A DNA stretch of 64,000 bases from assembly GCF_006345805.1 (NCBI RefSeq), contig NC_043007.1, positions 26,226,001-26,290,000 of the forward strand. The letters are read 5' to 3'. The notes under the pieces are model-generated. The model did no database searches. It had not been told where the DNA came from and saw only the letters and a program-made list of their open reading frames with translations. The DNA comes from Octopus sinensis (lineage: Eukaryota). A program made the position numbers and the translations under genes. Numbering within the stretch: position 1 is the first letter of the stretch; the number at the start of each line of letters is the position of its first letter. Shown piece by piece: positions 4,769 through 56,462 of this stretch.

Positions 4769-5283
4769 CCAACAAAATCACTCGTTGTTTCAGTCATTAG
4801 ACTACGGCCATGCTGGGGCATTGCCTTGAATTTTTAGTTGAATGAATCGATCCCAGTACTTATTTTCAAAAAAAAAAGTGATACTTATACTGTCTTTTGC
4901 CGAACCGCTAAGTTACAGGGACGTAAGCACATCAGCACCGGTTGTCAAGCGGTGGTGTAGGACAAAACACAGACACAAAGATACATACACACCCACACCA
5001 ATGCACACATACATATATACATACATACATACATATATATATATATATAGATATATATATATTTAATCAATATAGGGAGGCAAAAAATTTTGTAGAATTC
5101 TTTTGCCCCCAGCGGCCTAGTGGAAAAAATTAAATAGTCATAACCATTTTTAAGTTCAATATCACACTCAAGGAACGGCATAATAGGCCATTCACCCACT
5201 AGAAATACAGCCAAAAAGCTTCAACCGCAAAATAACATTAATTCCGTAAACCAGGAGAAAATTAAAAAAACATTTACCCTGAA

Positions 5284-5390
5284 ATTCCTTATAATACGAT
5301 GCACCGTTTCGTCTACTGTTTATGGTAAACTACCTGATTAAATTAAATCAACCAATCTACCATAGGCCCTTAGATTCATCAGTAAGGAAT
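5284..5390 (-). ncRNA. Type I hammerhead ribozyme, copy 1 (3-nt duplication at the cleavage site)
   Basis: Minus strand ATTCCTTA-CTGATGA-stem II-GAAA-CGGTGCATCG-TA-TTA-TAAGGAAT. Confidence 0.7.
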
Positions 5391-5769
5391 AGCCAATCGA
5401 CAGATATTTTTCACGAGGCATTCCCGTCCATGCCTCGCCAATATCTGACCTAAAATTTTCAAATCGTCGCACTCGCGCCAAATTTATCGGCAGCAAATAA
5501 ATATAAGCCGCCGATTCCATTACGGAACCAACCAGAAAATTCATAATTAATCAATATAGGGAGGCAAAAAAATTTTGTAGAATTCTTTTGCCCCCAGCGG
5601 CCTAGTGGGAAAAAATTAAATAGTCATAAACCATTTTTAAGTTCAATATCACAATCAAGGAACGGCCATAATAGGCCATTCACCCACTAGAAATAACAGC
5701 CAAAAAGCTTCAACCGCAAAATAAATTAATTCCGTAAACCAGGAGAAATAAAAAAACATTTACCCTGAA

Positions 5770-5877
5770 ATTCCTTATACGATGCAACCGTTTCGTCTAC
5801 TGTTTAATGGTAAACTAACCTGATTAAATTAAATCAAGCCAATCTACCATAGGCCCTTAGATTCATCAGTAAGGAAT
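5770..5877 (-). ncRNA. Type I hammerhead ribozyme, copy 2
   Basis: Core CUGAUGA and GAAA, GUA cleavage triplet, 8-bp stem I ATTCCTTA/TAAGGAAT. Confidence 0.8.
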
Positions 5878-6260
5878 AGCCAAATCGGAACAGATATTTT
5901 TCACGAGGCATTCCCGTCCATGCCTCGCCAATATCTGACCTAAAATTTTCAAATCGTCGCACTCGCGCCAAATTTATCGGCAGCAAATAAATATAAGCGC
6001 CGCCGATTCCATTACGGAACCAACCAGAAAATTCATAATTAATCAATATAGGGAGGCAAAAAAATTTTGTAGAATTCTTTTGCCCCAGCGGCCTAGTGGG
6101 AAAAAATTAAATAGTCAAAACCATTTTTAAGTTCAATATCACAATCAAGGAACGGCCATAATAGGCCATTCACCCACTAGAAATAACAGCCAAAAAGCTT
6201 CAACCGCAAAATAACATTAATTCCGTAACCAGGAGAAAATTAAAAAACATTTACCCTGAA

Positions 6261-6367
6261 ATTCCTTATACGATGCACCGTTTCGTCTACTGTTTAATGG
6301 TAAACTAACCTGATTAAATTAAATCAAGCCAATCTACCATAGGCCCTTAGATTCATCAGTAAGGAAT
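6261..6367 (-). ncRNA. Type I hammerhead ribozyme, copy 3
   Basis: Intact core, stem I of 8 bp, near-palindromic stem III ACGGTGCATCGT, long stem II rich in G-U pairs. Confidence 0.85.
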
Positions 6368-6772
6368 AGCCAAATCGGAACAGATATTTTTCACGAGGCA
6401 TTCCCGTCCATGCCTCGCCAATATCTGACCTAAAATTTTCAAATCGTCGCACTCGCGCCAAATTTATCGGCAGCAAATAAATATAAGCCGCCGATTCCAT
6501 TACGGAACCAACCAGAAAATTCATAATTAATCAATATAGGGAGGCAAAAAAATTTTGTAGAATTCTTTTGCCCCCAGCGGCCTAGTGGGAAAAATTTGAT
6601 TATATTGATTAATTATGAATTTTCTGGTTGAGGTTCCGTAATGGAATCGGCGGCTTATATTTATTTGCTGCCGATAAATTGGCGCGAGTGCGACGATTTG
6701 AAAATTTTAGGTCAGATATGGCGAGGCATGGACGGGAATGCCTCGTGAAAAATATCTGTTTCCGATTTGGCT

Positions 6773-6876
6773 ATTCCTTACTGATGAATCAGGGCCTATG
6801 GTAGATTGGCTTTGATTAATTTAATCAGGTTAGTTTACCATAAACAGTAGACGAAACGGTGCATCGTATAAGGAAT
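6773..6876 (+). ncRNA. Type I hammerhead ribozyme, inverted copy 4
   Basis: CTGATGA 6781-6787, GAAA 6853-6856, GTA 6866-6868, stem I 6773-6780 with 6869-6876; 2-nt deletion at the base of stem II. Confidence 0.75.
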
Positions 6877-6996
6877 TTCAGGGTAAATGTTTTTTTAATT
6901 TTCTCCTGGTTTACGGAATTAATGTTATTTTGCGGTTGAAGCTTTTTGGCTGTTATTTCTAGTGGGTGAATGGCCTATTATGGCCGTTCCTTGATT

Positions 6997-7034
<38 letters not shown>

Positions 7035-7210
7035 TATATATATATAATATAATATAATATATATACATATACATATACATATATATACATTATATATTAT
7101 ATATATATAATATGTATGTGTGTGTGTGTATACATATATACATCATATATATACATTATATATATATATATATATAATATATACATCTATATGCATATAT
7201 ACCTTACATT

Positions 7211-7267
<57 letters not shown>

Positions 7268-7292
7268 GTATATATATGTATATATTATCTAT

Positions 7293-7343
<51 letters not shown>

Positions 7344-7344
7344 G

Positions 7345-7377
<33 letters not shown>

Positions 7378-7429
7378 TATATATATATATATATATATTA
7401 CATACATACATACATACATATTATATATA

Positions 7430-7481
<52 letters not shown>

Positions 7482-7590
7482 CACATACATATATACACAC
7501 ATACATACACATACACACACACGCATATGTATGTATTTATACATGAACCATTGTTGTAATAATCATTTCCTCACCATTTCTATTCGACAG

Positions 7591-7934: not shown

Positions 7935-7948
7935 CCTCCTCATCATCG

Positions 7949-7983
<35 letters not shown>

Positions 7984-8026
7984 GTCATCGTCGTCGTCGT
8001 CGTCGTCATCATCATCATCATCATCA

Positions 8027-8058
<32 letters not shown>

Positions 8059-8167
8059 ATCGTCATCGTCATCATCATCATCATCATCATCGTCATCGTC
8101 ATCGTCGTCGTCGTCGTCGTCATCATCATCATCATCATCATCATCGTCATCGTCGTCGTCGTCGTCG

Positions 8168-8201
<34 letters not shown>

Positions 8202-8204
8202 TAT

Positions 8205-8245
<41 letters not shown>

Positions 8246-8247
8246 TC

Positions 8248-8305
<58 letters not shown>

Positions 8306-10894: not shown

Positions 10895-11310
10895 GGCGGC
10901 GAGCTGGCAGAAACGTTAGCACGCCGGGCGAAATGCTTAGCGGTATTTCGTCTGTCTTAACGCTCTGAGTTCAAATTCCGCCGAGGTCGACTTTGCCTTT
11001 CATCCTCTCGGGGTCGATAAATTAAGTACCAGTTACGTACTGGGGTCGATGTAATCGACTTAATACCTATGTCTGTCCTTGTTTGTCCCCTCTGTGTTTA
11101 GCCCCTTGTGGGTAATAAAGAAATAGGCATTTCGCTTGTCGTTACGTTGTGAGTTCAAATTCCGCCGAGGTTGACTTTGCCTTTCATCCTTTCGGGGGTC
11201 GATAAATTAAGTACCAGTTACGCACTGGGGTCGATGTAATCGACTTAATACCTATGTATGTCCTTGTTTGTCCCCTCTATGTTTAGCCCTTTGTGGGTAA
11301 TAAAGAAATA
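10895..11310 (+). mobile_element. SINE family B with duplicated 3' module and 15-bp TSD
   Basis: Head ggcggcgagctggcagaaacgttagc with gagttcaaattcc B box; TSD ggtataaatgagtaa at 10878-10892 and 11311-11325. Confidence 0.9.
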
Positions 11311-12035
11311 GGTATAAATGAGTAAGCCTAGAATATAAATACCACTTATAGCAGTGCTAAAGTATCTGATGTGGCGTAACGGCAGTTTTTTTCCCAATGT
11401 GCCAGGGACCGGTAATATTTCTTAGTAATATTAATTTATACCGGAAACAATATATATATAAAATTTGGTGAGTACCACGCCCCAGGGGCCAGCTGATAAG
11501 TTGTTTACTGCAGTGCATAATTCGAAAGTAATGAAATTATGCTGCTGTTTCTTTCTTTTCTGGAAACTCGCCGCGTACCGTAGCACTGGCTTATGGGACT
11601 CATAGATGCAAAGATCAAAATTGTCTAACTTCTTGAATCATTACCTTAATTAGTTTATGGCATTCACTTGAAGATCATGCAAGACGTCGGTCATATAATA
11701 AAAGAAAAAGACAAAAAAGAAAAAAAGAACAAACAAATTTAAAATCTGCTCAGGAAAGTAATATAGTTAAAAAGGGTCAGTTAGTAAAATAGCGTGGAAA
11801 AATAAGAACATTTACTCTTTGCTTCAATCATTTGACTGTGGCCATGCTGGAGCACCGCCTTTTAGTCGAGCAAATCGACCCCAGCACTTATTCTTTATCG
11901 ATCGCATTCTCACCTGGAATCGACTTATACACGCCCTGATACCGTCGGTATCTACATATCAAAGTTGAGCGCAATCGAATGGAGGATGCCCGAGATCCTA
12001 GAAGACACACACACAGACAGAACGGATTTTATGTA

Positions 12036-14528: not shown

Positions 14529-15388
14529 GGCAATTTGAGAGGAAATCGGTTGCTATTTCTAGCAGGTTACAGTAGTCTGGAGGGGATTTCATGTTGACTC
14601 ATATTAGTAGTAGCAGTTGTATAGTTGTTATTACTAGAGGAAACAACTTACAGGATCCAAGAGGACAGGGAGATAAAGCGATTTTCATTGTGGAAGCATT
14701 AAGTGGTATATATGAGTAAGCCTATGCTTCGTCGATGAGGTCTTATAACACCGGAACACGCATGGGTTTAGTTTTTCACCGTACTTGGCGAAGCTTAAAC
14801 TCAATCCTAACTGGATTGTTAGTATTTGGCTTATCTAAATATCAAAATTGTTTACGTCGTTCTTCTTAACCAGAATTAATAATACAGCAATTATTAATTG
14901 CTAAGATTCATGCTGAAACTCACAACGGTCGTAGGAGGGGGGGGAATTTTTGCTAATTAATTAATTATTTTAGACTCACGTTATTAAGAATGTTAACTCG
15001 TCCACTTAGCTACGTCATCGAACGTGACACTTTACAAGACGGTAGAACCTGATTTGATGCAGATTTGGCTATTATTTCTAGCAGGTCGAATAGCCTCTTA
15101 CAGATTTTCATAATGGCTCGAATTCCTTCGTTAGCTCGTTGTTTTCTGTGGTGGAGGTGGTGGTTATTATTGTTCGTATCGTTTAGCGAGAGGTAAGCCT
15201 TGTTCTTGTAGACCTGTAATGCAAAGCAATGCAACCGTTACAACGCGTTCTTTTTTTCCTATGTTCAGAGAACAAAACCTAGAACTATATCATATAACGT
15301 TGATCACAACAGAGCGACGGAATTGGCGAAACCATTAGAACATCAAATAAAATACCTTACGATAGCTTTTCGAGCTCTTTACGTTCTG

Positions 15389-21699: not shown

Positions 21700-21859
21700 A
21701 TCTATCTATCTATCTATCTATCTATCTCTCTCTCTCTATCTATCTATCTATTTATCTTTCACAGTCTCTTTCTCTCACTCTCTCTATTCTATACGTGTAT
21801 GTGTGTATGCGCATATTTGTGCATAGATATAGATAGATAGATAGATAGATAGATAGATC

Positions 21860-21927
<68 letters not shown>

Positions 21928-21944
21928 TAAATACAATGCAAATG

Positions 21945-23711
21945 CGACATGGACGTCCGTAAACGGTACACATATTGTCCTGGGTCAGGAAAGTCTTGTG
22001 ATAAAACAGGTTCGATCATCTGCTCAGGTAAGGTGAATGCTGTGCCATAGACAAGTTCAGCCGGAGTATATCCAAAATCCACCTTAACCGTGAATCGAAT
22101 ACCAAGGAGGATGAGAGGGAGATGTTCCAGCCACTGAGAACTGTCTGAAGATGCTTTTATAGATGCCTTGAGTTGGCGGTGAAAACGTTCGACCATGCCA
22201 TTTGCTGCAGGGTGGTAAGCCGCAGTGCGGGTGTGTTTACACCCGATGAGACGAGTCAGCTCGGTAAAAGAGGTGGGAATCGAACTGACGTCCTCTACCG
22301 GTGGTGATTGTTCCGGGTGTGCCAAAACTCGAAACCTATTGTGCTATCAACGTTTTGGCGACCGTTTCTGCCGATGTATCAGATAAGGGCCAAGCTTCGG
22401 ACCACCGCGATATACGATCCACCCAGATAAGCAAATGTGTATAATTCTGCGAAGGTGGCAGAGGTACCACAATGTCAATGTGAACGTGCTGGAATCGTGC
22501 GTCGGGTTGCGAAAAGGAACCGATTGGTGAATAATGGACACAGCACTTGGTCCATTTTCTGATATCCTTGTTGATACTGGTCCATACAAAACGGGTCGAT
22601 ATCAACTTTTGAGTGGAGCGAATACCAGGATGTGATAGAGAATGTATAGCAGAGAAAACTTCTCGACGATGTTTCTGTGGTATATAAGGGCGTTGGTGAC
22701 CGGTGAAGATATCACACCAAATATGGGCCGTGGACGATGGTAGCGGAACATGCTGAAATTTCAGAGATGACGAATTCCGGAGCTTTAGAAGTTCTTCGTC
22801 CTTCTCCTGGTCAGCTGCTACACGTGCCAGAACAATTGTAGCCGTGGTGTGGATAGCATTGATCTGCGTGCATGAAAGTGCATCGGCTGCTAAGCTGGTT
22901 GTCCCTTTGATGTGGCGTATATCTGTCGTATACTGTGATATGAAGTTGAGGTGACGAATTTCTCTCGGCGAGTGGCGATCTGGCTTGGTATTAAATGCAT
23001 AAACCACTGACCATTGGTCGGTGTATATGGCAAAATTGGTACCTTCTAGCATGTGACGGAAGTGCTTAACGGCCAGGTATGCCGCTAATAATTCCCGACT
23101 GAATGAATGTGATGTATTTGGTTTCCGCGAGTTTTAACCGCTTAGAAAAGAAGGACAACGGTTGCCATATGCCGTCAACAAACTGCTGTAGTACACCTCC
23201 AACTCTGGAATCGGATGCATCAATGAGTAAACGCCGTGGGGCGTCTGGTTTTGGATAAACCAGCATGGTAGCGTCGGATAACGCTTTTTTCAGGGCTGCG
23301 AAAGAGGCGAGTTGATCTTCGTTCAGGACAATTTCCGTATCTTTGCAAGTTCGCTGACGTAGCAAATCCGTGAGCAGTTGCGCTATCTCAGTGAGGTGGG
23401 CTACGAACCTTCGATAGAAATCCACTAGGCCGAGATATTCCCTTAATTTGCGGAGAGATGTGGGTGTTGGAAAATCCTGGATGGCCTTGACATTCTCGGG
23501 AATGTCCGAGAAAATGAAGGGAAGCAACTCCGAGCATTTGCTGGGGCTGATAACAACACCGCATTTGCGGAGGCGTCCAAATAGCAGGGACAGGTGTTGG
23601 TGATGTTCCTCGTCCGAGCTACTCGCCACGAGTATGTCGTCTATGTAGGCATAGACGAAAGGCAGACCTCTAGTAACCATGTCGATAAACCTTTGGAATG
23701 TCTGTGCAGCG
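21945..23711 (-). mobile_element. Ty3/Gypsy LTR-retrotransposon pol fragment (RT, RNase H, integrase), frameshifted, no LTRs
   Basis: ORFs 23066-23680 (AYIDDILV; IDASD...GGVLQQ), 22336-23052 (HSLSHPG; HVHIDIV) and 21789-22325 (YHPAANGMVERFHRQLK); AAQTFQRFID read upstream; RT-RH-INT order is Gypsy-type. Confidence 0.95.
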
Positions 23712-23889
23712 TACAGCTAAATATCCATTAGAAAGAAGAAAAAGCAGTATAAAGAAGAGAAAAACACCCAATTTCAACACAAAAAACAATAATATTTTAG
23801 TAACAATCTTCCTACATATTTTCCTATATATTTTTTTCCTGCGTGGAAACACCACTCCCTCTTTTGTTATATATATAATTATATATATA

Positions 23890-24033
23890 CAACAAAATAT
23901 TAAGGAATGACCCTGAGAAGGTCGTTCGACTCACTTGAAAAGAGCAGCTAAAACTCAGAACCGCAAAAAACTTAGCTGCTCTTTTCAAGTGAGTCGAACG
24001 ACCTTCTCAGGGTCATTCCTTAATATTTTGTTG
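23890..24033. repeat. Perfect hairpin, 62-bp arms and 20-nt loop (MITE-like)
   Basis: caacaaaatattaagg...gagcagctaa (23890-23951) is the exact reverse complement of 23972-24033. Confidence 0.95.
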
Positions 24034-24129
24034 AATGTATCATATAGTCTGTGACTCTTTCTATTTTCTCACTTGACCGCTGGTGGCAGAAAATTTTCTT
24101 GAACTTTTTGTTACCCTTATATTGATTGA

Positions 24130-24161
<32 letters not shown>

Positions 24162-27960: not shown

Positions 27961-27995
27961 ATTCAAAGCTTCAAGGTTAAAATGGAATACACATG

Positions 27996-28492
27996 ATCTC
28001 TTCTCCTTATCTCCTCAAAGACATACAGCATCTCGAAAGAGTCCAGAAGCTGGCTACCCGCATGGTTCATGGTCTCAAAAATTTGTCCTATGAAGAAAGG
28101 CTGAGGACGCTCGACCTTTATTCTCTAGAAAAACGCCGCCGCCGTGGTGATCTCATTCTCGCCCACATCATCATAAGCGGAAAGTGTAACCTCTCGAAAG
28201 AGCTGTTCTTCCCTCCTGCTCCAGAGCGTCGGCTGCGGGGTCATTCCGAAAAGCTCTACCTGCGACGATTTCATCTCAATCGAGGGAGAGGAGCTTTCTC
28301 CGTCCGGGTTGCGGATCCGTGGAACAAGCTGCCAGACGAGATGGTGAAGATGCCGACGACCGCTTTGTTCAAAGTCTCCCTTGACCTCAAGTGGCCTGAA
28401 CTCTTTACATGAACACCACCCTGTACTTAACTCCATGTCTCCCTACATGGCCTTGCTATTTGCTTTTGAGCCAAATTAACTAACTAACTAAC
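27996..28492 (+). mobile_element. 5'-truncated CR1-clade LINE (RT C-terminus, 3' UTR, (TAAC)n tail)
   Basis: LERVQKLATRMVHGLKNLSYEERLRTLDLYSLEKRRRRGDLI...RGH...FSVRVADPWNKLP; tail at 28477-28492. Confidence 0.9.
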
Positions 28493-34377: not shown

Positions 34378-34933
34378 CTTTTCTACTCTAGGCACAAGGC
34401 CTGAAATTTTGGGGGAGGGAGCCAATTGATTAGATCGACTCCAGTACGCAACTGGTCCTTAATTTATCGACCCCGAATGGATGAAAGGAAAAGTCAGCCT
34501 CGACGGAATTTGAACTCAGAACGTAAAGACAGACGAAATACCTATTGCTTCACTACCCACAACGGGCTAAACACAGAGAGGACAAACGGATTAAGTCGAT
34601 TTCATCGACCCCAGTGCATAACTGGTACTTATTTAATCGACCCCGAAAGCATGAAAGGCAAAGTTGACCTCGGCGGAATTTGAACTTAGAACGTAGCGGT
34701 AGATGAAATACCTATTTCTTTGCTACCCACAAGGGGCTAAATACAGAGAGGACAAAGAAGGACAGACAAATTGATTATATCGACCCAGTGCATAAATGGT
34801 ACTTATTTACTCGACCCCGAAAGGATGAAAGGCAAAATCGACCTCGGCGGAATTTGAACTCAGAACTTAAAGACAGACGAAATACCGCTAAGCATTTTGC
34901 CCGGCGTGATAAGTTTTCTGCCAACTCGCCGCT
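34378..34933 (-). mobile_element. SINE family B trimer (one head, three central/3' modules)
   Basis: The central domain ...cgacccc(g)aa(a)ggatgaaaggcaaag... is repeated three times. Confidence 0.85.
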
Positions 34934-35689: not shown

Positions 35690-36248
35690 ATTATTTCTTC
35701 ATTCTTCTCTTCTTCTTCTTCTTCTTCTTCTCTTCTTCTTCTTCTTCTTCTTCTTCTTTTTCTTTTTCTTCTTCTTTGTCTTTTTCTTTCTTTCTTCTTT
35801 TCTTTTTCTTTTTCTTCTCTTTCTTCTTCTTCTTCTTCTTCTTCTTCTTCTTTTCTTTTCTTCTTCTTCTTCTTCTTCTTCTTCTTCTTCTTCTTCTTCT
35901 TCTTCTTCTTCTTCTTCTTCTTCTTCTCTTTCTTCTTCTTCTTCTTCTTCTTCTTCTTCTTCTTTTTTCTTTTTCTTTTTTCTTTCTTGTTCTTCTCTCC
36001 CTCTTCTTCTTCCTTCTTCTTCTTCTCTTCTTCTTCTTCTTCTTTTTCTTCTTCTTCTTCTTTTCTGCTCTTTCTTTCTTCTCCTCCTTCTCCTCTTCCT
36101 TTTTTCTTTCGGCTTCGTCCTCTTTTTTCTCGCTGTTATCATAAACATCATGATCGTTGTCGTCGTCGTTGTCGTCGCCGTCGTCGACATCGTCATCATC
36201 CTCCTCATCATCATCATCAATATCATCCTCCTCCTCATCATCATCAAT

Positions 36249-36285
<37 letters not shown>

Positions 36286-36298
36286 ATATCATCAATAT

Positions 36299-36332
<34 letters not shown>

Positions 36333-36334
36333 AT

Positions 36335-36371
<37 letters not shown>

Positions 36372-36448
36372 ATATCATATTCATCATCATCATCATCTTT
36401 ATCATCATTGTGATTTCCATCAGTGTCATAGTTTTCATCGTCGCTGTG

Positions 36449-36490
<42 letters not shown>

Positions 36491-36491
36491 G

Positions 36492-36526
<35 letters not shown>

Positions 36527-36545
36527 GTCATCATCGTCATCATCG

Positions 36546-36598
<53 letters not shown>

Positions 36599-36661
36599 GT
36601 CATCATCATCATCGTCATCATCGTCATCATCATCATCATATCATCATCATCATCATCATCG

Positions 36662-36711
<50 letters not shown>

Positions 36712-36721
36712 GTCATCATCG

Positions 36722-36757
<36 letters not shown>

Positions 36758-36786
36758 CATCATCATCATCATCATCATCATCATCG

Positions 36787-36848
<62 letters not shown>

Positions 36849-36920
36849 TCATCGTCATCATCATCATCATCATCATCGTCATCATCGTCATCATCGTCAT
36901 CATAATCATCATCATCATCG

Positions 36921-36952
<32 letters not shown>

Positions 36953-37000
36953 GTCATCATCGTCATCATCATCATCATCATCATCGTCATCATCGTATCA

Positions 37001-37033
<33 letters not shown>

Positions 37034-37156
37034 GTCATCATCGTCATCATAATCATCATCATCATCGTCATCATCATCATCATCATCATCATAATCATCA
37101 TCATCATCGTCATCATCGTCATCATCGTCATCATCATCATCATCATCATCATCGTC

Positions 37157-37187
<31 letters not shown>

Positions 37188-37273
37188 ATCATCATCATCA
37201 TCATCATCATCATCATGTCATCATCATCATCATCATCATCCTCTCCTCATCATCATCATCATCATCATAATCG

Positions 37274-37308
<35 letters not shown>

Positions 37309-37352
37309 GTCATCATCGTCATCATCCATCATCATCATCATCGTCATCATCG

Positions 37353-37387
<35 letters not shown>

Positions 37388-37421
37388 GTCATCATCGTCA
37401 TCATAATCATCATCATCATCG

Positions 37422-37459
<38 letters not shown>

Positions 37460-37507
37460 GTCATCATCGTCATCATCGTCATCATCATCATCATCATCAT
37501 CATCGTC

Positions 37508-37539
<32 letters not shown>

Positions 37540-37574
37540 CATCATCATCGTCATCATCATCATCATCATCGTCG

Positions 37575-37615
<41 letters not shown>

Positions 37616-37690
37616 GTCATCATCGTCATCATCGTCATCATCATCATCATCATCTTCACCTTCATCACCACAGTCACCACCATCGTCTTT
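35690..37690. repeat. ~2-kb compound microsatellite: (TTC)n then (CAT)n with CGT/AAT interruptions
   Basis: Direct reading; source of the spurious 597-aa and 539-aa ORFs. Confidence 0.95.
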
Positions 37691-42303: not shown

Positions 42304-42809
42304 CGACGACGACGACGACGACGATGATGATGATCATGATGACGATTTTGATCATCTTTTTTCACGTATTACTTGTGTCAGTCCTTGGAGTGCAGCCATG
42401 CTGGGGCACAGCCTTAAGGGGGTATAGTCGAACGAATCGACCCACCACCACCACCAGAAATCAGTATTAAGTCCTGGTATGATTTCTCTTGCTTTCCTTT
42501 GCTGAAGCGTTAAGGTACGAGGTCTTAAACAAACGAATACCTATTGTCAAATGGTGAAGGAACGACAAACATAAACACAGTCATACGCAGACATCAAACA
42601 CACACACATATTCATGCGCGCACGCACGTAGACAGACAGGCACTCACACACACAAACAAACATACACAAACACACATACACGCATATATCGGCGCCGTAA
42701 TAAAACACCATTAAAACACCATTAAAACATCATTAAAACACCATTAAAACACCATTAAAAACAAACAGGAACAATAATAGTTCTTAAATTTGACAGAAAC
42801 GAGGAGGTT

Positions 42810-42880
42810 CATTCGCTGGTGTAAAGGTAACACATTTAGTCGCGTTAAAACAGGGATGTGGGTTCGTCTCCCACCCGGAT
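42810..42880 (+). other. tRNA-like Pol III element (degenerate SINE head or tRNA pseudogene)
   Basis: A-box-like tggtgtaaagg and B-box-like ggttcgtctcc about 35 nt apart; no clean cloverleaf. Confidence 0.35.
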
Positions 42881-44541
42881 AGGAAAGTCTTCTTTTTACT
42901 GTCGAGACCTTATATGTCCCTTTATTGGACTATTTTCCTTAGTCATTGCACGATGATCACTATAAGCTTATATAAAAATGCCATTGCTATTTTTTACAGG
43001 ATTATAAACTCTGCGCCGTATAAAAACACCATTTGCACTGAAAGCCTATATGTATATATATATATATATTTGTGTGTATGTGTGTGTGTGTGTGTGTGTA
43101 TGTATTATATAAGTATAGGGAGAATTCAAAAATAAAACAAAAACGAAGACAGGTGGTGTAGACAATAAAGAGATGTATTAGTTATTAGTTTAACGCTCGG
43201 GAAGTGAAAAAGTCTTTAACGTTTCCAACCTACGCTCTTCCACAGGAAGGAACACAGAAAGAAACAAGGAGAGAAAATAAAGAATGTGTACTGGTTAGCG
43301 ATCTATCATGGCGAATGCCGGACAGAAGGCCCGCACAGGAGAGCTAGGGCGAAGGGGAGATAATAAAGTGGTGGTGATCCCAAAATGAAGGTGCGCGTGT
43401 GTGTGTATAAGAGAATTTTTATGTGCGTGTGGAAGAGGGCTGGTGATCTTGACGTGTGCGTGTGTGTATGTGTAGGTGTGAAAATGTGGTTCTGTGAAGT
43501 GGTCAGTGGTGATGTGTTCGTGGTGGTGTGTTGTGATGTGATGTGTTGTGTGGTATGGTGGTGTAAGGTGTAGTGGTGTGTGCTGTGTGGTGTGATGGTG
43601 TTGGGAGGTGGGGAGGCGGGAGTGGGGAAAGCAAAGTTGGGGTGTGGGTTAGGCTGAAAATGGGGTAGGTGTGGCGTATGTGGGTGAACGGATGTTGGGG
43701 GTAGATGTGGGGTATGTCGGTAGGCGGAGGGTGGGGGTAGAGGTGGAAGCATGTGGGAGTGAGTGTAAGGGATGAGGTGGGGTGAGATGGGGAAGAGAGA
43801 GACACAAACCATAATTATTCAGCCACTTGACTACATAGAAACAACTCCTGTCCATTCTACCACTCGACCCATCAAATTTAGAGAACCTTAATTTGGGACT
43901 GTCGCTAGACATGTCCATTCAACCGTGCCAGCTTTGATTCTCGGAGCAAAAACTTATTGTCATATATTAACACACGGACGTAGTGGGGAACCCACATAAA
44001 TTTCTAAGATTAGTACAAATCACGAGATCTTCCTCTACTACAGATAAGATTCAAACAGCCCTGACCGCTACAGATTATCAGCAGACGTGTTCACTCAACG
44101 GTGACAGCTTTAACTAACGACGCCAAACATATTGTAACATGGCATTAAAGAATGGACGTAGCGGAGGTCTTACAAAAATTTCTAAACCTGATCACGTGAT
44201 CATACTCGACCAATCTAAATGTATGCAATAAAGATACTGATTTAAGCCATGTTCTTTCTATAAAAGTAAGAAATTTATTGAATTCCAATCTGAAGCAAGA
44301 CAATTTCAGCATAAGTCCATGTCTTTTGTTGTCAACTTTCGAAAAGCAGAGGAATCTGTAAAACCAGTATTCTTTCAATATTTTAAAATAAAAAACCGAA
44401 AGGAATCCCAGTGCATTTTGAACTTCTCTATATTTCTACCCATGTGGAATTAAATTGCATTGTTTTCTCTCTCTTTCTCTCCACCCCTCTATCTCTATTT
44501 TTCTCTCTCTTTCTCTCTCTATCTTTATACACAGACATACA

Positions 44542-46619: not shown

Positions 46620-47117
46620 CAAGAACGTAGCGGCAGACAAAATACCTATTTCTTTACTACACACAAGGGGCTAAACACAAAGAGGAGGAACAAGGACAGA
46701 CAAACAGATAAATCGATTATAAAGGACAGATAAATCGATTATATCGACCCCAGTGTGTAACTGGTACTTATTTAATCGACCCCGAAAGGATGAAAGGCAA
46801 AGTCGACCTCGGCGGAATTTGAACGCAGAACGTAACGGCAGACGAATTACGGCTACGCATTTCGCCCGGCGTGCTAACGATTCTGCCAGCTCGCCGCCTT
46901 TAGCGGCAGACAAAATACCGCTAAGCATATTGACATGGCTTGCTAACGATTCCGCCAGCTCGCTGCCTTCAGGATAAGAAATAATAATAATAATTTATTC
47001 TTTTATTAGCCGTAAGGGCTCATAAACGAATCAAAACTCACAATAGGGGAGACTAAGATCCTCGTGGAAAACCCCACAAAAGCCACGGGTGCCTGAACAA
47101 CAGAACAAGAGCCTTTG

Positions 47118-55974: not shown

Positions 55975-56462
55975 GGCGGCGAGTTGGCAGAAACGTTAGC
56001 ACGCCGGACGAAATGTGTGGCCGTATTTCGTCTGCCGTTACGTTCTGAGTTCAAATTCCGCCGAGGTCGACTTTGCCTTTCATTCTTTCGGAGTCGATAA
56101 ATTAAGTACCAGTTACGCATCGGAGTCGATATAATCGAGTTAACCCGTTTGTCTGTCCTTCTTTGTCCCCTCTGTGTTTAGCCCCTTGTGGGTAGTAAAG
56201 AAATATGTATTTCGCTTGTGTTTATATTATAACACGGCGAGCTGGCAGAAACGTTAGCACGGCGGGCGAAATGCATAGCCATATTTCGTCTGCCGTTGCG
56301 TTTTGAGTTCAAATCCCGCCGAGGTCAACTTTGCTTTTTATCCTTTCGGGGTCGATTAAATAAGTACCAGTAACGCACTGGGGTCGATATAATCGATTTA
56401 ATCCGTTTATCTGTCCTTGTTTGACCCCTATATGTTTAGCCCCTTGTGGGTAATAAAGAAAC
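55975..56462 (+). mobile_element. Two tandem family B SINEs
   Basis: Heads at 55975 and ~56235. Confidence 0.85.

What the first reader, a model, noticed from the sequence alone, without database searches (positions are those of the whole stretch)
5063..7003. Tandem ~490-bp hammerhead-ribozyme repeat: candidate cephalopod retrozyme that could make circular RNA
Seen in sequence: every full unit carries a type I hammerhead fold on one strand. Its parts are stem I ATTCCTTA/TAAGGAAT (8 bp, then an internal loop and a further ~5 bp), core CUGAUGA, GAAA, stem III ACGGTGCATCGT and a GUA cleavage triplet. Stem II is unusually long: a ~20-bp helix (TATGGTAGATTGGCTTGATT/AATCAGGTTAGTTTACCATA) with five G-U pairs, so it folds on the ribozyme strand only, which suggests RNA-level selection. 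The rest of the unit has more short inverted repeats (cgaggcat/atgcctcg, cagatatt/aatatctg, ctagtggg/cccactag, ttccgtaa/ttacggaa). Established: metazoan non-LTR retrozymes are tandem, non-coding, type I hammerhead repeats whose transcripts self-cleave to monomers and circularise, probably using Penelope-like element machinery. Inference: this is such a family with a large monomer and an extended stem II; I do not know whether it has been described in octopus. Caveat: position 10.1-11.1 is A.C instead of the usual G-C.
Basis: partly seen in the sequence, partly recalled or inferred. Interest (0 to 1): 0.92.

Follow-up and report, generated by a model that had tools for sequence, protein, structure and literature searches.

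The report
Octopus hammerhead-ribozyme tandem repeat (retrozyme-like)
A 490-bp non-coding repeat in an octopus genome carries a hammerhead self-cleaving-RNA motif and looks like a mobile "retrozyme" copied in by Penelope-type retrotransposon machinery, a known kind of element not yet reported in cephalopods, though whether this ribozyme actually cuts is untested.

Summary
On the minus strand each copy has the type I hammerhead core (CUGAUGA, GAAA, GUA), an 8-bp helix I, a short palindromic helix III and a helix II with a 20-bp extension. Only units 2 and 3 are intact.

Chance expectation is about 4e-4 per unit. The helix II and III base pairs next to the core match the validated mussel retrozyme ribozyme, apart from G10.1 to A.

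Weaknesses:
- No Rfam hammerhead model hits, and a custom covariance model gives no significant hit.
- The 10.1/11.1 pair is A.C.
- The single-motif fold is 3 kcal/mol above the MFE. A dimeric double-hammerhead fold is favoured by about 11 kcal/mol.

A second, diverged insertion of the family (23883-24134, no ribozyme part) has the same sense-plus-inverted layout, the same two termini and (TA)n flanks. This is a Penelope-like integration signature.

Verdict: probably a new cephalopod member of the non-LTR retrozyme class. Catalysis, circular RNA and conservation across copies are untested. Interest is moderate.

The parts
5063..6597 (-). Direct tandem array of 3.13 units of about 490 bp. The ribozyme sense is on the minus strand. 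Its 3' end in ribozyme sense, at about 5063, abuts (AT)n.
   Evidence: TRF gives period 490, 3.1 copies and 96% matches. blastn and nhmmer place units at 5067-5552, 5551-6044, 6043-6532 and 6531-6597.
6601..7003 (+). Inverted, 5'-truncated copy of 0.82 unit, joined head-to-head to the direct array. Its 3' end at 7003 abuts (AT)n.
   Evidence: Inverted-repeat arms are 93-100% complementary. blastn aligns unit positions 94-490 to 7003-6607 at 97%. The junction was read. The two arms are truncated at different unit positions, so it is not a perfect palindrome.
6596..6600 (.). Head-to-head junction, or filler, between the direct array and the inverted copy.
   Evidence: The sequence is GGGAAAAATTTGAT|TATATTGATTAATTATG.
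6261..6367 (-). Hammerhead type I motif of unit 3, intact. Helix I is 8 bp, followed by CUGAUGA and the A10.1.C11.1 mismatch. Proximal helix II is UCUA/UAGA, then an internal loop and a 20-bp distal helix. GAAA follows, then helix III ACGG-UGCA-UCGU and the GUA triplet.
   Evidence: Descriptor hit, coordinates, folds.
5770..5877 (-). Hammerhead motif of unit 2, intact. It has one extra U in loop 3.
   Evidence: Descriptor hit, alignment, coordinates.
5284..5390 (-). Hammerhead motif of unit 1, defective. A 3-nt insertion directly after GUA breaks the helix I register, and 1-nt deletions affect both arms of distal helix II.
   Evidence: Alignment A1. It fails the descriptor.
6773..6876 (+). Hammerhead motif of the inverted copy, weakened. 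It lacks UA in proximal helix II (AUCAGGGCC).
   Evidence: Alignment A1. It fails the descriptor. Coordinates.
6268..6269 (-). Predicted cleavage site of unit 3, after A17 at 6269 on the minus strand. Together with the site at 5778/5777 it would release a 491-nt monomer.
   Evidence: This is inferred from the motif and has not been shown.
5777..5778 (-). Predicted cleavage site of unit 2, after A17 at 5778.
   Evidence: Inferred.
6297..6341 (-). Distal extension of helix II in unit 3: 20 bp with five G.U pairs and a 6-nt loop.
   Evidence: Pair list. It is formed in every fold and largely lost on the opposite strand.
4980..5062 (.). Left flanking microsatellite, (ACAT)n/(AT)n. This is the putative target site.
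7004..7495 (.). Right flanking (AT)n-rich microsatellite. This is the putative target site.
23972..24134 (+). Second, diverged insertion of the family: sense arm, 68% identical to unit positions 1-151. It contains no hammerhead part and ends ...TATATTGATTGATTAATT|(AT)n, homologous to the terminus of the main array.
   Evidence: blastn, sequence, alignment A3, nhmmer E = 7.6e-8.
23883..23951 (-). Second insertion: inverted arm, 69 nt and 97% complementary to 23972-24040. It ends at the position homologous to the end of the main inverted copy and abuts (TA)n.

Best explanation
This is a non-autonomous, non-coding retroelement of the metazoan 'non-LTR retrozyme' kind in an Octopus genome, carrying a type I hammerhead ribozyme related to the one in mussel retrozymes.

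Proposed mechanism:
1. [Inferred] The array is transcribed on the minus strand into an oligomeric RNA.
2. [Thermodynamics computed, catalysis inferred] Helix III alone is unstable but self-complementary. Hammerheads of neighbouring units therefore pair through helix III into a double hammerhead. They cut after GUA, at 6269|6268 and 5778|5777.
3. [quoted passage not shown]
4. [Inferred from the architecture seen here] A Penelope-like element's reverse transcriptase and endonuclease copy the circular or multimeric RNA into (TA)n microsatellites. Priming occurs at AU-rich sites of the RNA. The product is tandem copies, an adjacent inverted 5'-truncated copy, and a ~95-nt 'tail' at one end only.

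With A10.1.C11.1 and two damaged copies out of four, this locus may be only weakly active or already decaying.
For: Tandem array of 490 bp, 3.1 copies.

Complete hammerhead core and correct three-helix type I topology in two consecutive units:
- Chance expectation is about 4e-4 per unit, and zero hits in 30 Mb at the observed helix lengths.
- The best local match between the cloned, self-cleaving mussel retrozyme Mg353 and the unit is the hammerhead itself: GTAGACGAAACG 12/12 and ACTGATGA followed by (G/A)TCT. The proximal helix II (UCU/AGA) and helix III (ACG/CGU) pairs are therefore identical. The coral and axolotl ribozymes differ there.

Dimer fold:
- The helix III hairpin is -0.2 kcal/mol, against -17.5 for a 12-bp self-duplex.
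- The dimer cofold is -87.1 against 2 x -37.9, with all core nucleotides free.
- This matches the published dimeric behaviour of short, palindromic helix III motifs.

Precedent for a 10.1/11.1 mismatch: axolotl HHR_Amex2 has U.U there and is expressed as circular RNA.

Class features: GC 37.5%, no ORF longer than 70 aa within the repeat units, no Pfam hit for the one unit ORF scanned, and no homologue in 5.8 billion proteins.

PLE-type signature:
- The locus is a direct array plus an inverted 5'-truncated copy in (AT)n.
- An independent, diverged insertion at 23883-24134 has the same layout, homologous termini on both arms and (TA)n flanks.
- The termini lie at monomer positions ~231 and ~133, not at the cleavage site (491/1). 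The template was therefore not a cleaved linear monomer primed at its end.

Host and partner: Penelope-clade PLEs, including young families, are annotated in Octopus vulgaris. The host is an Octopus.
Against: - No Rfam hammerhead model matches, even at E <= 10 on 2 kb.
- A covariance model I built from four validated retrozyme hammerheads gives only 11.5-bit partial alignments, E about 0.6.
- The 10.1/11.1 pair is A.C instead of the near-universal G-C.
- As a single motif, the catalytic fold is 3 kcal/mol above the MFE. The MFE pairs core UGAUG with CAUCG, and the helix III pairing probability is about 1%.
- Loop 2 lies about 25 bp from the core, so the canonical loop1-loop2 contact is impossible.
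- Two of the four copies have indels that break a helix.
- I found no other hammerhead-bearing copy, so conservation and covariation of the ribozyme are untested.
- There is no PLE ORF in the window.
- There are no expression data.
- Differences between units are largely indels, mostly at homopolymers or short duplications. Some motif defects, or some apparent intactness, could be assembly noise.
Confidence: 0.62

Rival explanations
1. Relic ribozyme. The repeat descends from a hammerhead-bearing PLE or retrozyme lineage, but the G10.1 to A change and the helix II expansion inactivated the ribozyme. The family now spreads, or spread, as an ordinary PLE-dependent non-autonomous repeat or by DNA-level amplification, without self-cleavage or circular RNA.
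For: - All four copies have A.C at 10.1/11.1, where the homologous mussel motif has G-C.
- Covariance models find no significant hit.
- The catalytic fold is disfavoured as a monomer.
- Two of the four copies carry further helix-breaking indels.
- The second family member lacks the ribozyme part altogether yet was inserted with the same architecture.
- PLE min-hammerheads themselves cleave poorly in vitro.
Against: - The rest of the core and all three helices are intact in two consecutive units.
- The palindromic helix III and the strongly favoured dimer fold look maintained.
- A 10.1/11.1 mismatch is tolerated in an expressed, circularised axolotl retrozyme.
- The five non-Watson-Crick pairs in distal helix II are all G.U on the ribozyme strand and none is A.C. 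That would be about 1 in 32 if transitions hit at random.
Confidence: 0.22
2. Solo pseudo-LTR arrays of an autonomous Penelope-like element. The 490-bp unit is the pLTR or terminal region of a coding PLE, present here as a tandem remnant rather than a distinct non-autonomous family.
For: - PLE pLTRs carry type I hammerheads with a large helix II, an unpaired nucleotide at the base of helix II and a small palindromic helix III.
- PLE insertions are tandem and inverted with tails.
- Retrozyme consensus sequences are sister to PLE pLTRs in Xenopus.
Against: - No RT or GIY-YIG coding sequence adjoins either insertion.
- There are 3.1 head-to-tail units with no intervening ORF.
- Helix I is long (8 bp plus an extension), unlike the 4-5 bp of PLE min-hammerheads.
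- This rival is a matter of classification more than of mechanism.
Confidence: 0.1
3. Ordinary satellite or foldback repeat in which a hammerhead-like string arose by chance. The inverted part would be a DNA rearrangement or an assembly artefact.
For: - Covariance models find no significant hit.
- Only one hammerhead-bearing locus is available.
- The inter-unit differences, largely indels, suggest noisy long-read assembly.
Against: - Chance expectation of the motif is about 4e-4 per unit.
- The non-core helix sequences coincide with the mussel retrozyme ribozyme.
- The junction is not a perfect palindrome.
- A second, 30%-diverged insertion reproduces both termini and the inverted layout. An assembly artefact or random rearrangement would not do this.
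Confidence: 0.05

Closest known systems
Mytilus galloprovincialis non-LTR retrozymes (clone Mg353; Cervera & de la Pena 2020, PMC7229834)
   Same: - Mollusc host, tandem non-coding AT-rich repeat and a type I hammerhead.
- The sequences next to the core are identical: CUGAUGA-(G/A)UCU...UAGAC-GAAACG...CGU.
- Helix III is palindromic.
- It lacks the archetypal loop1-loop2 contact nucleotides.
   Different: - The mussel motif has G10.1-C11.1, a 4-bp helix II closed by a 5-nt loop, and GUC.
- The octopus motif has A10.1.C11.1, about 58 nt inserted in place of loop 2 (an internal loop plus a 20-bp helix), and GUA.
- The monomer is 490 nt against 350-390 nt.
- There is no similarity outside the ribozyme.
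- The mussel RNA is shown to cleave and circularise, whereas nothing is shown here.
Axolotl retrozyme Rtz_353 with HHR_Amex2 (PMC7229834)
   Same: - It has a mismatch at the base of helix II (U.U at 10.1/11.1) and a GUA triplet.
- It has a short palindromic helix III.
- Activity as a monomer is weak and much better as a dimer.
   Different: - The host is a vertebrate.
- Helix II is short, with loop-loop contacts partly kept.
- The helix sequences are different, and the unit is 350 bp.
Minimal and atypical hammerheads in the pseudo-LTRs of Penelope-like elements (Cervera & de la Pena 2014, PMC4209133)
   Same: - Helix II is larger than usual, with an unpaired nucleotide at its base.
- Helix III is small and palindromic, implying dimeric action.
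- They are associated with tandem and inverted insertions at microsatellites.
   Different: - PLE min-hammerheads have a 4-5-bp helix I, a 6-8-bp helix II and almost no helix III. Here helix I is 8 bp or more, helix II is about 25 bp in two segments, and helix III is 3-4 bp.
- No PLE ORF is attached here.
Newt satellite 2 and Schistosoma Sm-alpha hammerhead repeats (from my own knowledge and the summaries)
   Same: - Tandem genomic repeats of a few hundred bp with type I hammerheads.
- Processing of multimeric transcripts is helped by dimerisation.
   Different: - They have the canonical G10.1-C11.1 pair, a short helix II and conserved loop-loop tertiary contacts.
- They are recognised by Rfam models.
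Plant LTR retrozymes (PMC4918200)
   Same: Non-autonomous retroelements whose transcripts are cut by hammerheads and circularised.
   Different: Type III hammerheads located in LTRs, with PBS and PPT, GC above 55%, mobilised by Gypsy elements. None of these features applies here.

Membership tests
Hammerhead ribozyme, type I | Conserved core: CUGANGA, GAAA, and a UH cleavage dinucleotide (here GUA) | tested here: met
   The core is present in all four copies. All positions that are invariant in the four validated retrozyme hammerheads are kept, except 10.1.
Hammerhead ribozyme, type I | Three helices around the core, with helix I open-ended and helices II and III closed by loops | tested here: met
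   The descriptor hits units 2 and 3 with helix I 8 bp, helix II 4 bp or more, and helix III 4-5 bp. The constrained fold is -34.9 kcal/mol. Unit 1 and the inverted copy fail.
Hammerhead ribozyme, type I | G10.1-C11.1 pair closing helix II | tested here: not met
   All four copies have A10.1.C11.1.
Hammerhead ribozyme, type I | Match to the curated covariance models (Rfam Hammerhead families) at gathering score | tested here: not met
   There is no hammerhead hit at gathering score on the window, nor at E <= 10 on 5000-7050.
Hammerhead ribozyme, type I | Match to a covariance model of experimentally active retrozyme hammerheads | tested here: inconclusive
   Model R1 (coral, mussel and two axolotl motifs) ranks the three minus-strand sites first. 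However, the score is 11.5 bits (E about 0.6), and the alignments are partial, local and skip helices II and III. The 58-nt insertion in loop 2 probably defeats the model.
Hammerhead ribozyme, type I | Tertiary contact between loop 1 and loop 2 | not testable with these tools
   Loop 2 sits about 25 bp from the core, so the canonical contact cannot form. An internal loop after 4-5 bp of helix II could substitute, but this is speculation. Mussel retrozyme motifs also lack the archetypal contact nucleotides.
Hammerhead ribozyme, type I | Conservation and covariation of helices across independent copies | not testable with these tools
   The four copies are 96-98% identical. No other hammerhead-bearing copy was found in the window, in metagenome or viral contigs, or in 44 kb of other Octopus DNA.
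Hammerhead ribozyme, type I | Site-specific self-cleavage | not testable with these tools
   This needs an in vitro transcription assay.
Metazoan non-LTR retrozyme | Tandem repeat with at least two consecutive units each carrying a complete type I hammerhead (operational definition in 10.64898/2026.07.22.740005) | tested here: met
   TRF array, with units 2 and 3 passing the descriptor. Definition read. My descriptor allows the 10.1/11.1 mismatch, and theirs may not.
Metazoan non-LTR retrozyme | Monomer of a few hundred nt (150-450 in PMC7229834; family consensus lengths of 51-972 bp in the 2026 preprint) | tested here: met
   Monomers between cleavage sites are 491 and 483 nt. This is slightly above the 2020 range and inside the 2026 range.
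Metazoan non-LTR retrozyme | Low GC (below 45-50%) and no coding capacity | tested here: met
   GC is 37.5%. The longest ORF within the repeat units is 70 aa. The one unit ORF scanned has no Pfam hit, and no homologue was found. LTR, PBS and PPT motifs were not searched for specifically.
Metazoan non-LTR retrozyme | Co-occurrence with autonomous Penelope-like elements in the host genome | tested here: met
   Met through the literature only. Penelope-clade families are annotated in O. vulgaris and Naiad PLEs in Octopus spp.. No PLE ORF lies in this window.
Metazoan non-LTR retrozyme | Expression as linear and circular monomer RNA | not testable with these tools
   No transcriptome data could be searched by nucleotide sequence. 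Exact-ORF look-ups found nothing.
Penelope-like-element style insertion | Tandem copies with an adjacent inverted 5'-truncated copy at the 5' side | tested here: met
   Main locus and second insertion. Description from Craig et al. 2021.
Penelope-like-element style insertion | Insertion bias for microsatellites | tested here: met
   Both insertions are flanked on both sides by (AT)n/(TA)n. (AT)>=6 runs cover only 2.5% of the window.
Penelope-like-element style insertion | Extension ('tail') present at only one end of the insertion | tested here: inconclusive
   A stretch of about 95 nt (unit positions 1-93) is present at the sense end and absent from the inverted end in both insertions. The published tails are 30-40 bp, so the equivalence is uncertain.
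Penelope-like-element style insertion | RT plus GIY-YIG endonuclease ORF (autonomous element) | tested here: not met
   No such ORF was found near either insertion. The only RT-related ORFs in the window are Ty3/gypsy pol fragments and a LINE RT tail. The element would therefore be non-autonomous.

The most novel reading that the evidence does not exclude
An RNA-editing-gated ribozyme. A10.1 sits opposite C11.1 at the foot of a ~25-bp double-stranded helix. From general knowledge, an A.C mismatch in dsRNA is the context ADAR enzymes edit best, and cephalopods edit RNA unusually heavily. Editing A10.1 to inosine would create an I-C pair equivalent to the canonical G10.1-C11.1 and switch the hammerhead on.

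A related reading concerns composition. The five G.U pairs of the helix and the G>C, U>A skew of the ribozyme strand could be footprints of A-to-I editing of the RNA intermediate, fixed by reverse transcription.

Nothing here tests either idea, and nothing excludes them.
Probability: 0.04. Interest if true: 0.85.

Novelty: new member of a known kind. Interest (0 to 1): 0.5.

Why it matters
If confirmed, this would extend hammerhead retrozymes, and the ribozyme route to abundant small circular RNAs, to cephalopods. The same ribozyme lineage (the same helix II and III base pairs) would then be shared by a bivalve and an octopus, which suggests a long history within molluscs.

The motif is also a natural test case for how much a hammerhead tolerates: a 58-nt expansion of helix II and a mismatch at 10.1/11.1. 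It shows that covariance-model annotation misses such variants.

The two insertions share both termini, (TA)n targets and a sense-plus-inverted layout. Their termini lie away from the cleavage site. This gives concrete sequence-level clues to a poorly understood step, namely how retrozyme RNA is primed and integrated by Penelope-like machinery.

Tried and rejected
- **Rfam at gathering score and at E <= 10 on the region.** No hammerhead was found. The sub-threshold WsnRNA46 and FasX hits at 6461-6673 are artefacts of the head-to-head junction palindrome.
- **Protein-collection route.** I searched with the unit's spurious 66-aa ORF to reach other copies and ran exact look-ups of two unit ORFs. 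Nothing was found.
- **Pattern scans.** An 18-mer around the core against metagenome contigs gave 28 hits. All share only 20-22 nt with the unit, so they are chance matches. A 20-mer against viral contigs gave 0 hits.
- **Custom covariance model from four validated retrozyme hammerheads.** It gave only weak partial hits.
- **Sampling other Octopus DNA.** I used O. sinensis and O. vulgaris protein handles to fetch 24 kb and 20 kb. Both are paralogous loci sharing other TEs at 84-97%, with no copy of this family. They are not orthologous to the window, so presence or absence at the same locus could not be tested.
- **Weak blast match at 15064-15100** (37 nt, 84%). It is too short to interpret.
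- **Assembly-artefact reading of the inverted copy.** Rejected because the junction is asymmetric and the layout recurs in a diverged insertion.
- **Extra-nucleotide register.** I considered the register used by some viroid and PLE hammerheads, with a bulged A after A9. It does not restore a 10.1/11.1 pair here, because U would face C.
Most of the energy difference is compositional. The five-of-five G.U orientation is only about p = 0.03.
Full report
**1. What is in the sequence**

Tandem Repeats Finder reports a period-490 array at 5059-6594 with 3.1 copies and 96% matches. blastn and nhmmer of one unit against the window place direct copies at 5067-5552, 5551-6044 and 6043-6532, plus a 66-nt partial at 6531-6597. 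They also find an inverted copy that covers unit positions 94-490 at 7003-6607, at 97% identity.

The finding's interval therefore holds two parts joined head-to-head at about 6596-6600. One is a direct array, whose ribozyme sense lies on the minus strand. The other is an inverted, 5'-truncated copy. The two arms are truncated at different unit positions, about 66 and about 15, so the junction is not a perfect palindrome. (ACAT)n/(AT)n lies on the left and about 500 bp of (AT)n-rich microsatellite on the right.

Differences between copies are largely indels, 5-14 events against 3-12 substitutions per pair. Most are at homopolymers or short duplications. This could reflect polymerase slippage or long-read assembly noise.

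**2. The hammerhead motif**

On the ribozyme strand every copy has CUGAUGA, one GAAA and GCAUCGUA. In unit 3 (6261-6367, minus strand) the parts are:
- Helix I: AUUCCUUA/UAAGGAAU, 8 bp, followed by a small internal loop and about 4 more pairs.
- Core: CUGAUGA.
- An A10.1.C11.1 mismatch.
- Proximal helix II: UCUA/UAGA.
- An internal loop, then a 20-bp distal helix with 15 Watson-Crick and five G.U pairs and a 6-nt loop.
- GAAA.
- Helix III: ACGG-UGCA-UCGU.
- A17, giving the triplet GUA.

I wrote a formal descriptor: CUGANGA, helix II of at least 3 bp with or without a 10.1/11.1 mismatch, GAAA, helix III of at least 3 bp starting A15.1-U16.1, H17, and helix I of at least 5 bp. It finds only units 2 and 3 in the whole window on either strand.

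In 30 Mb of Markov-1 sequence with the unit's composition it gives 23 hits. That is about 4e-4 per 490 nt, or 0.05 per 64 kb. It gives none with helix I of 8 bp or more and helix II of 4 bp or more. Chance is therefore not a credible explanation for a motif sitting in the only long-period tandem array of the window.

Unit 1 fails because 3 nt are inserted directly after GUA. The inverted copy fails because 2 nt of proximal helix II are missing.

**3. Evidence against a canonical ribozyme**

- Rfam's hammerhead families do not match at gathering score or at E <= 10 on 2 kb.
- I built a covariance model from the four experimentally active retrozyme hammerheads printed in the supplement of PMC7229834 (coral, mussel, two axolotl). 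It ranks the three minus-strand sites first, but at 11.5 bits (E about 0.6) and as partial local alignments only.
- The likely cause is the roughly 58 nt standing where those models expect a 5-6-nt loop 2. Whatever the cause, the test is not passed.
- With the 10.1/11.1 mismatch disallowed, my descriptor finds nothing.
- As a single motif the catalytic fold (-34.9 kcal/mol) lies 3 kcal/mol above the MFE (-37.9). The MFE pairs core UGAUG with CAUCG of helix III, and helix III has about 1% pairing probability.

**4. Evidence for a genuine, dimer-acting hammerhead of the mollusc lineage**

ACGGUGCAUCGU is self-complementary. The hairpin is worth -0.2 kcal/mol, whereas two copies form a 12-bp duplex of -17.5 kcal/mol. 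Co-folding two motifs gives -87.1 against 2 x -37.9 kcal/mol, with helices I and II kept and every core nucleotide unpaired. This is the double-hammerhead arrangement that the literature describes for metazoan type I and PLE motifs with short palindromic helix III.

The cloned mussel retrozyme Mg353 self-cleaves and forms circles. Its hammerhead reads CUGAUGA-GUCU-uuugU-AGAC-GAAACG-cg-CGUC. The best local match between that 353-nt element and the octopus unit is exactly GTAGACGAAACG (12/12), plus ACTGATGA followed by (G/A)TCT. Nothing outside the ribozyme matches.

The non-core pairs of proximal helix II and of helix III are therefore the same in mussel and octopus, while coral and axolotl differ there. 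Relative to the mussel motif, the octopus motif has G10.1 changed to A, loop 2 replaced by a long helix, and C17 changed to A.

A mismatch at 10.1/11.1 has a precedent. Axolotl HHR_Amex2 has U.U, cleaves weakly as a monomer and well as a dimer, and yields circular RNA in tissues.

**5. The rest of the unit**

Monomers between predicted cleavage sites would be 491 and 483 nt, at 37.5% GC. No ORF within the repeat units exceeds 70 aa. The one unit ORF scanned has no Pfam hit and no relative among 5.8 billion proteins.

Folded as a circle, the ribozyme strand reaches -152.8 kcal/mol (z = -6.2, 59% paired, 21 of 145 pairs G.U). The opposite strand reaches -103.6 kcal/mol (z = -5.1). Most of that gap is compositional. 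The ribozyme strand is 60% G+U, and shuffles of the two strands differ by about 39 kcal/mol.

The one pointed observation is that all five non-Watson-Crick pairs of distal helix II are G.U on the ribozyme strand and none is A.C. That would be about 1 in 32 for random transitions (inference).

**6. A second insertion, and what the ends say**

A sensitive comparison found a diverged relative of the unit's non-ribozyme third at 23883-24134. It is 68-70% identical, with nhmmer E = 7.6e-8. It consists of:
- an inverted arm at 23883-23951;
- a sense arm at 23972-24134;
- a shared 69 nt that is 97% complementary between the arms, with a 20-nt spacer;
- (TA)n on both sides.

Aligned with the main locus, both sense arms stop at the homologous site...TATATTGATTAAAT|(AT)n and ...TATATTGATTGATTAATT|(AT)n. 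Both inverted arms stop about 95 nt earlier in the unit...GTGATAT|(AT)n and ...TTTGTTG|(TA)n.

Two independent events in two subfamilies thus share both termini, the target type and the sense-plus-inverted layout. Craig et al. 2021 describe Penelope-like-element insertions in these terms: partial tandems, an adjacent inverted 5'-truncated copy, a tail at one end only, and a microsatellite bias.

In monomer coordinates the termini are at about 231 and about 133. The cleavage site is at 491/1. The cDNA template was therefore not a cleaved linear monomer primed at its 3' end. An internally primed circular or multimeric RNA fits better (inference).

The diverged copy also keeps the long-range helix CUAGUGGG/CCCACUAG as UCAAGUGA/UCACUUGA. 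All 8 pairs are intact, with two compensatory changes and one single-sided compatible change. Other predicted helices are only partly kept. This says nothing about which strand is constrained.

**7. Host and partners**

- The window's Ty3/gypsy integrase fragment is 81% identical to an Octopus sinensis protein, and the next-best hit is 53%.
- Its LINE RT tail is 92% identical to an O. vulgaris protein.
- Dispersed repeats in loci fetched from both genomes match the window at 84-97%. The source is therefore an Octopus.
- Penelope-clade elements, including young families, are annotated in O. vulgaris, and Naiad PLEs are reported in Octopus spp..
- None lies in this window.

**8. Mechanism, with status of each step**

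1. Minus-strand transcription of the array is inferred.
2. Pairing of neighbouring hammerheads through helix III has computed thermodynamic support.
3. Cleavage after A17 at 6269 and 5778 is inferred from the motif.
4. Circularisation of a ~491-nt monomer by a host tRNA ligase is inferred from the published class.
5. Reverse transcription and integration by PLE machinery into (TA)n is inferred from the architecture and the shared termini seen here.

I give 0.62 to this overall reading. I put the chance that this particular hammerhead cleaves efficiently lower, at roughly 0.4.

**9. Comparison with what is known, and novelty**

The locus meets the structural criteria of metazoan non-LTR retrozymes. 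It fails two hammerhead criteria: the G10.1-C11.1 pair and the curated-model match. Its ribozyme combines features of the mussel retrozyme motif (sequence) and of PLE-type motifs (large helix II, unpaired base at its foot, palindromic helix III).

Full-text searches found no report of hammerhead repeats or retrozymes in cephalopods. The 2020 paper states, however, that such repeats occur in many invertebrate phyla.

I file it as a probable new member of a known kind with an unusual ribozyme variant. Interest is moderate, at 0.5.

**10. Limits**

- No independent hammerhead-bearing copy could be obtained.
- No expression or cleavage evidence exists here.

Noticed in passing
window 23883-24134: A second, diverged (68-70%) insertion of the same repeat family. 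It has an inverted arm plus a sense arm (69 nt, 97% complementary) and (TA)n on both sides. Its termini are homologous to those of the main array, and it has no hammerhead part.
   Followed up: yes
window 21789-23680 (minus strand): Degraded Ty3/gypsy-type pol: RVT_1, RNase H and integrase fragments in three broken ORFs. The integrase part is 81% identical to Octopus sinensis LOC115210498. The second retrozyme-like insertion lies only about 200 bp beyond its upstream end.
   Followed up: partly
window 27993-28412 (plus strand): 139-aa ORF resembling the C-terminal tail of a LINE reverse transcriptase. It has no Pfam hit. It is 92% identical in protein to an O. vulgaris hypothetical protein, and the DNA is 97% identical to a paralogous O. 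vulgaris locus (L030).
   Followed up: partly
window 6461-6673: Sub-threshold Rfam hits to bacterial sRNAs (WsnRNA46 at 42.7 bits, FasX at 39.7 bits). They are produced by the long perfect hairpin that the head-to-head junction of the direct and inverted copies creates, and are not genes.
   Followed up: yes
window 6344-6367, and the equivalent positions in units 1 and 2 (minus strand): Two alternative pairings could sequester the core. CCUUA (helix I 5' strand) can pair with UAAGG inside proximal helix II, enclosing CUGAUGA in a loop. UGAUG of the core can pair with CAUCG of helix III, which is the MFE fold. These are possible conformational switches or simply competitors.
   Followed up: partly
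window 5063-7003: Differences among the four copies are largely indels at homopolymers and short duplications (5-14 events against 3-12 substitutions per pair). This could be reverse-transcriptase or replication slippage, or long-read assembly error, and it affects which copies look 'intact'.
   Followed up: partly
window 10945-11312, 34424-34886, 46836-46969, 55977-56461: Tandem dimers (periods 185, 170, 69 and 258 bp). From reading the consensus units, they appear to share a GC-rich dispersed repeat containing ...TTCAAATTCCGCCGAGGTCGACTTTGCCTTTCATCC.... It looks like a SINE-type element often inserted next to itself.
   Followed up: no
window 42809-42883 (plus strand): A single predicted tRNA-Ala (anticodon CGC). 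It could be a gene or part of a tRNA-derived repeat.
   Followed up: no
window 36188-37667 and 7940-8305: Very long trinucleotide microsatellites: (CAT)n of about 495 copies and (TCA)n of about 122 copies. TRF reports 140 rows for the 64 kb, so microsatellite density is extreme. This matters for any argument based on microsatellite flanks.
   Followed up: no
window 15064-15100: A 37-nt stretch that is 84% identical to unit positions 117-152, in inverted orientation. It is too short to call a family member.
   Followed up: partly
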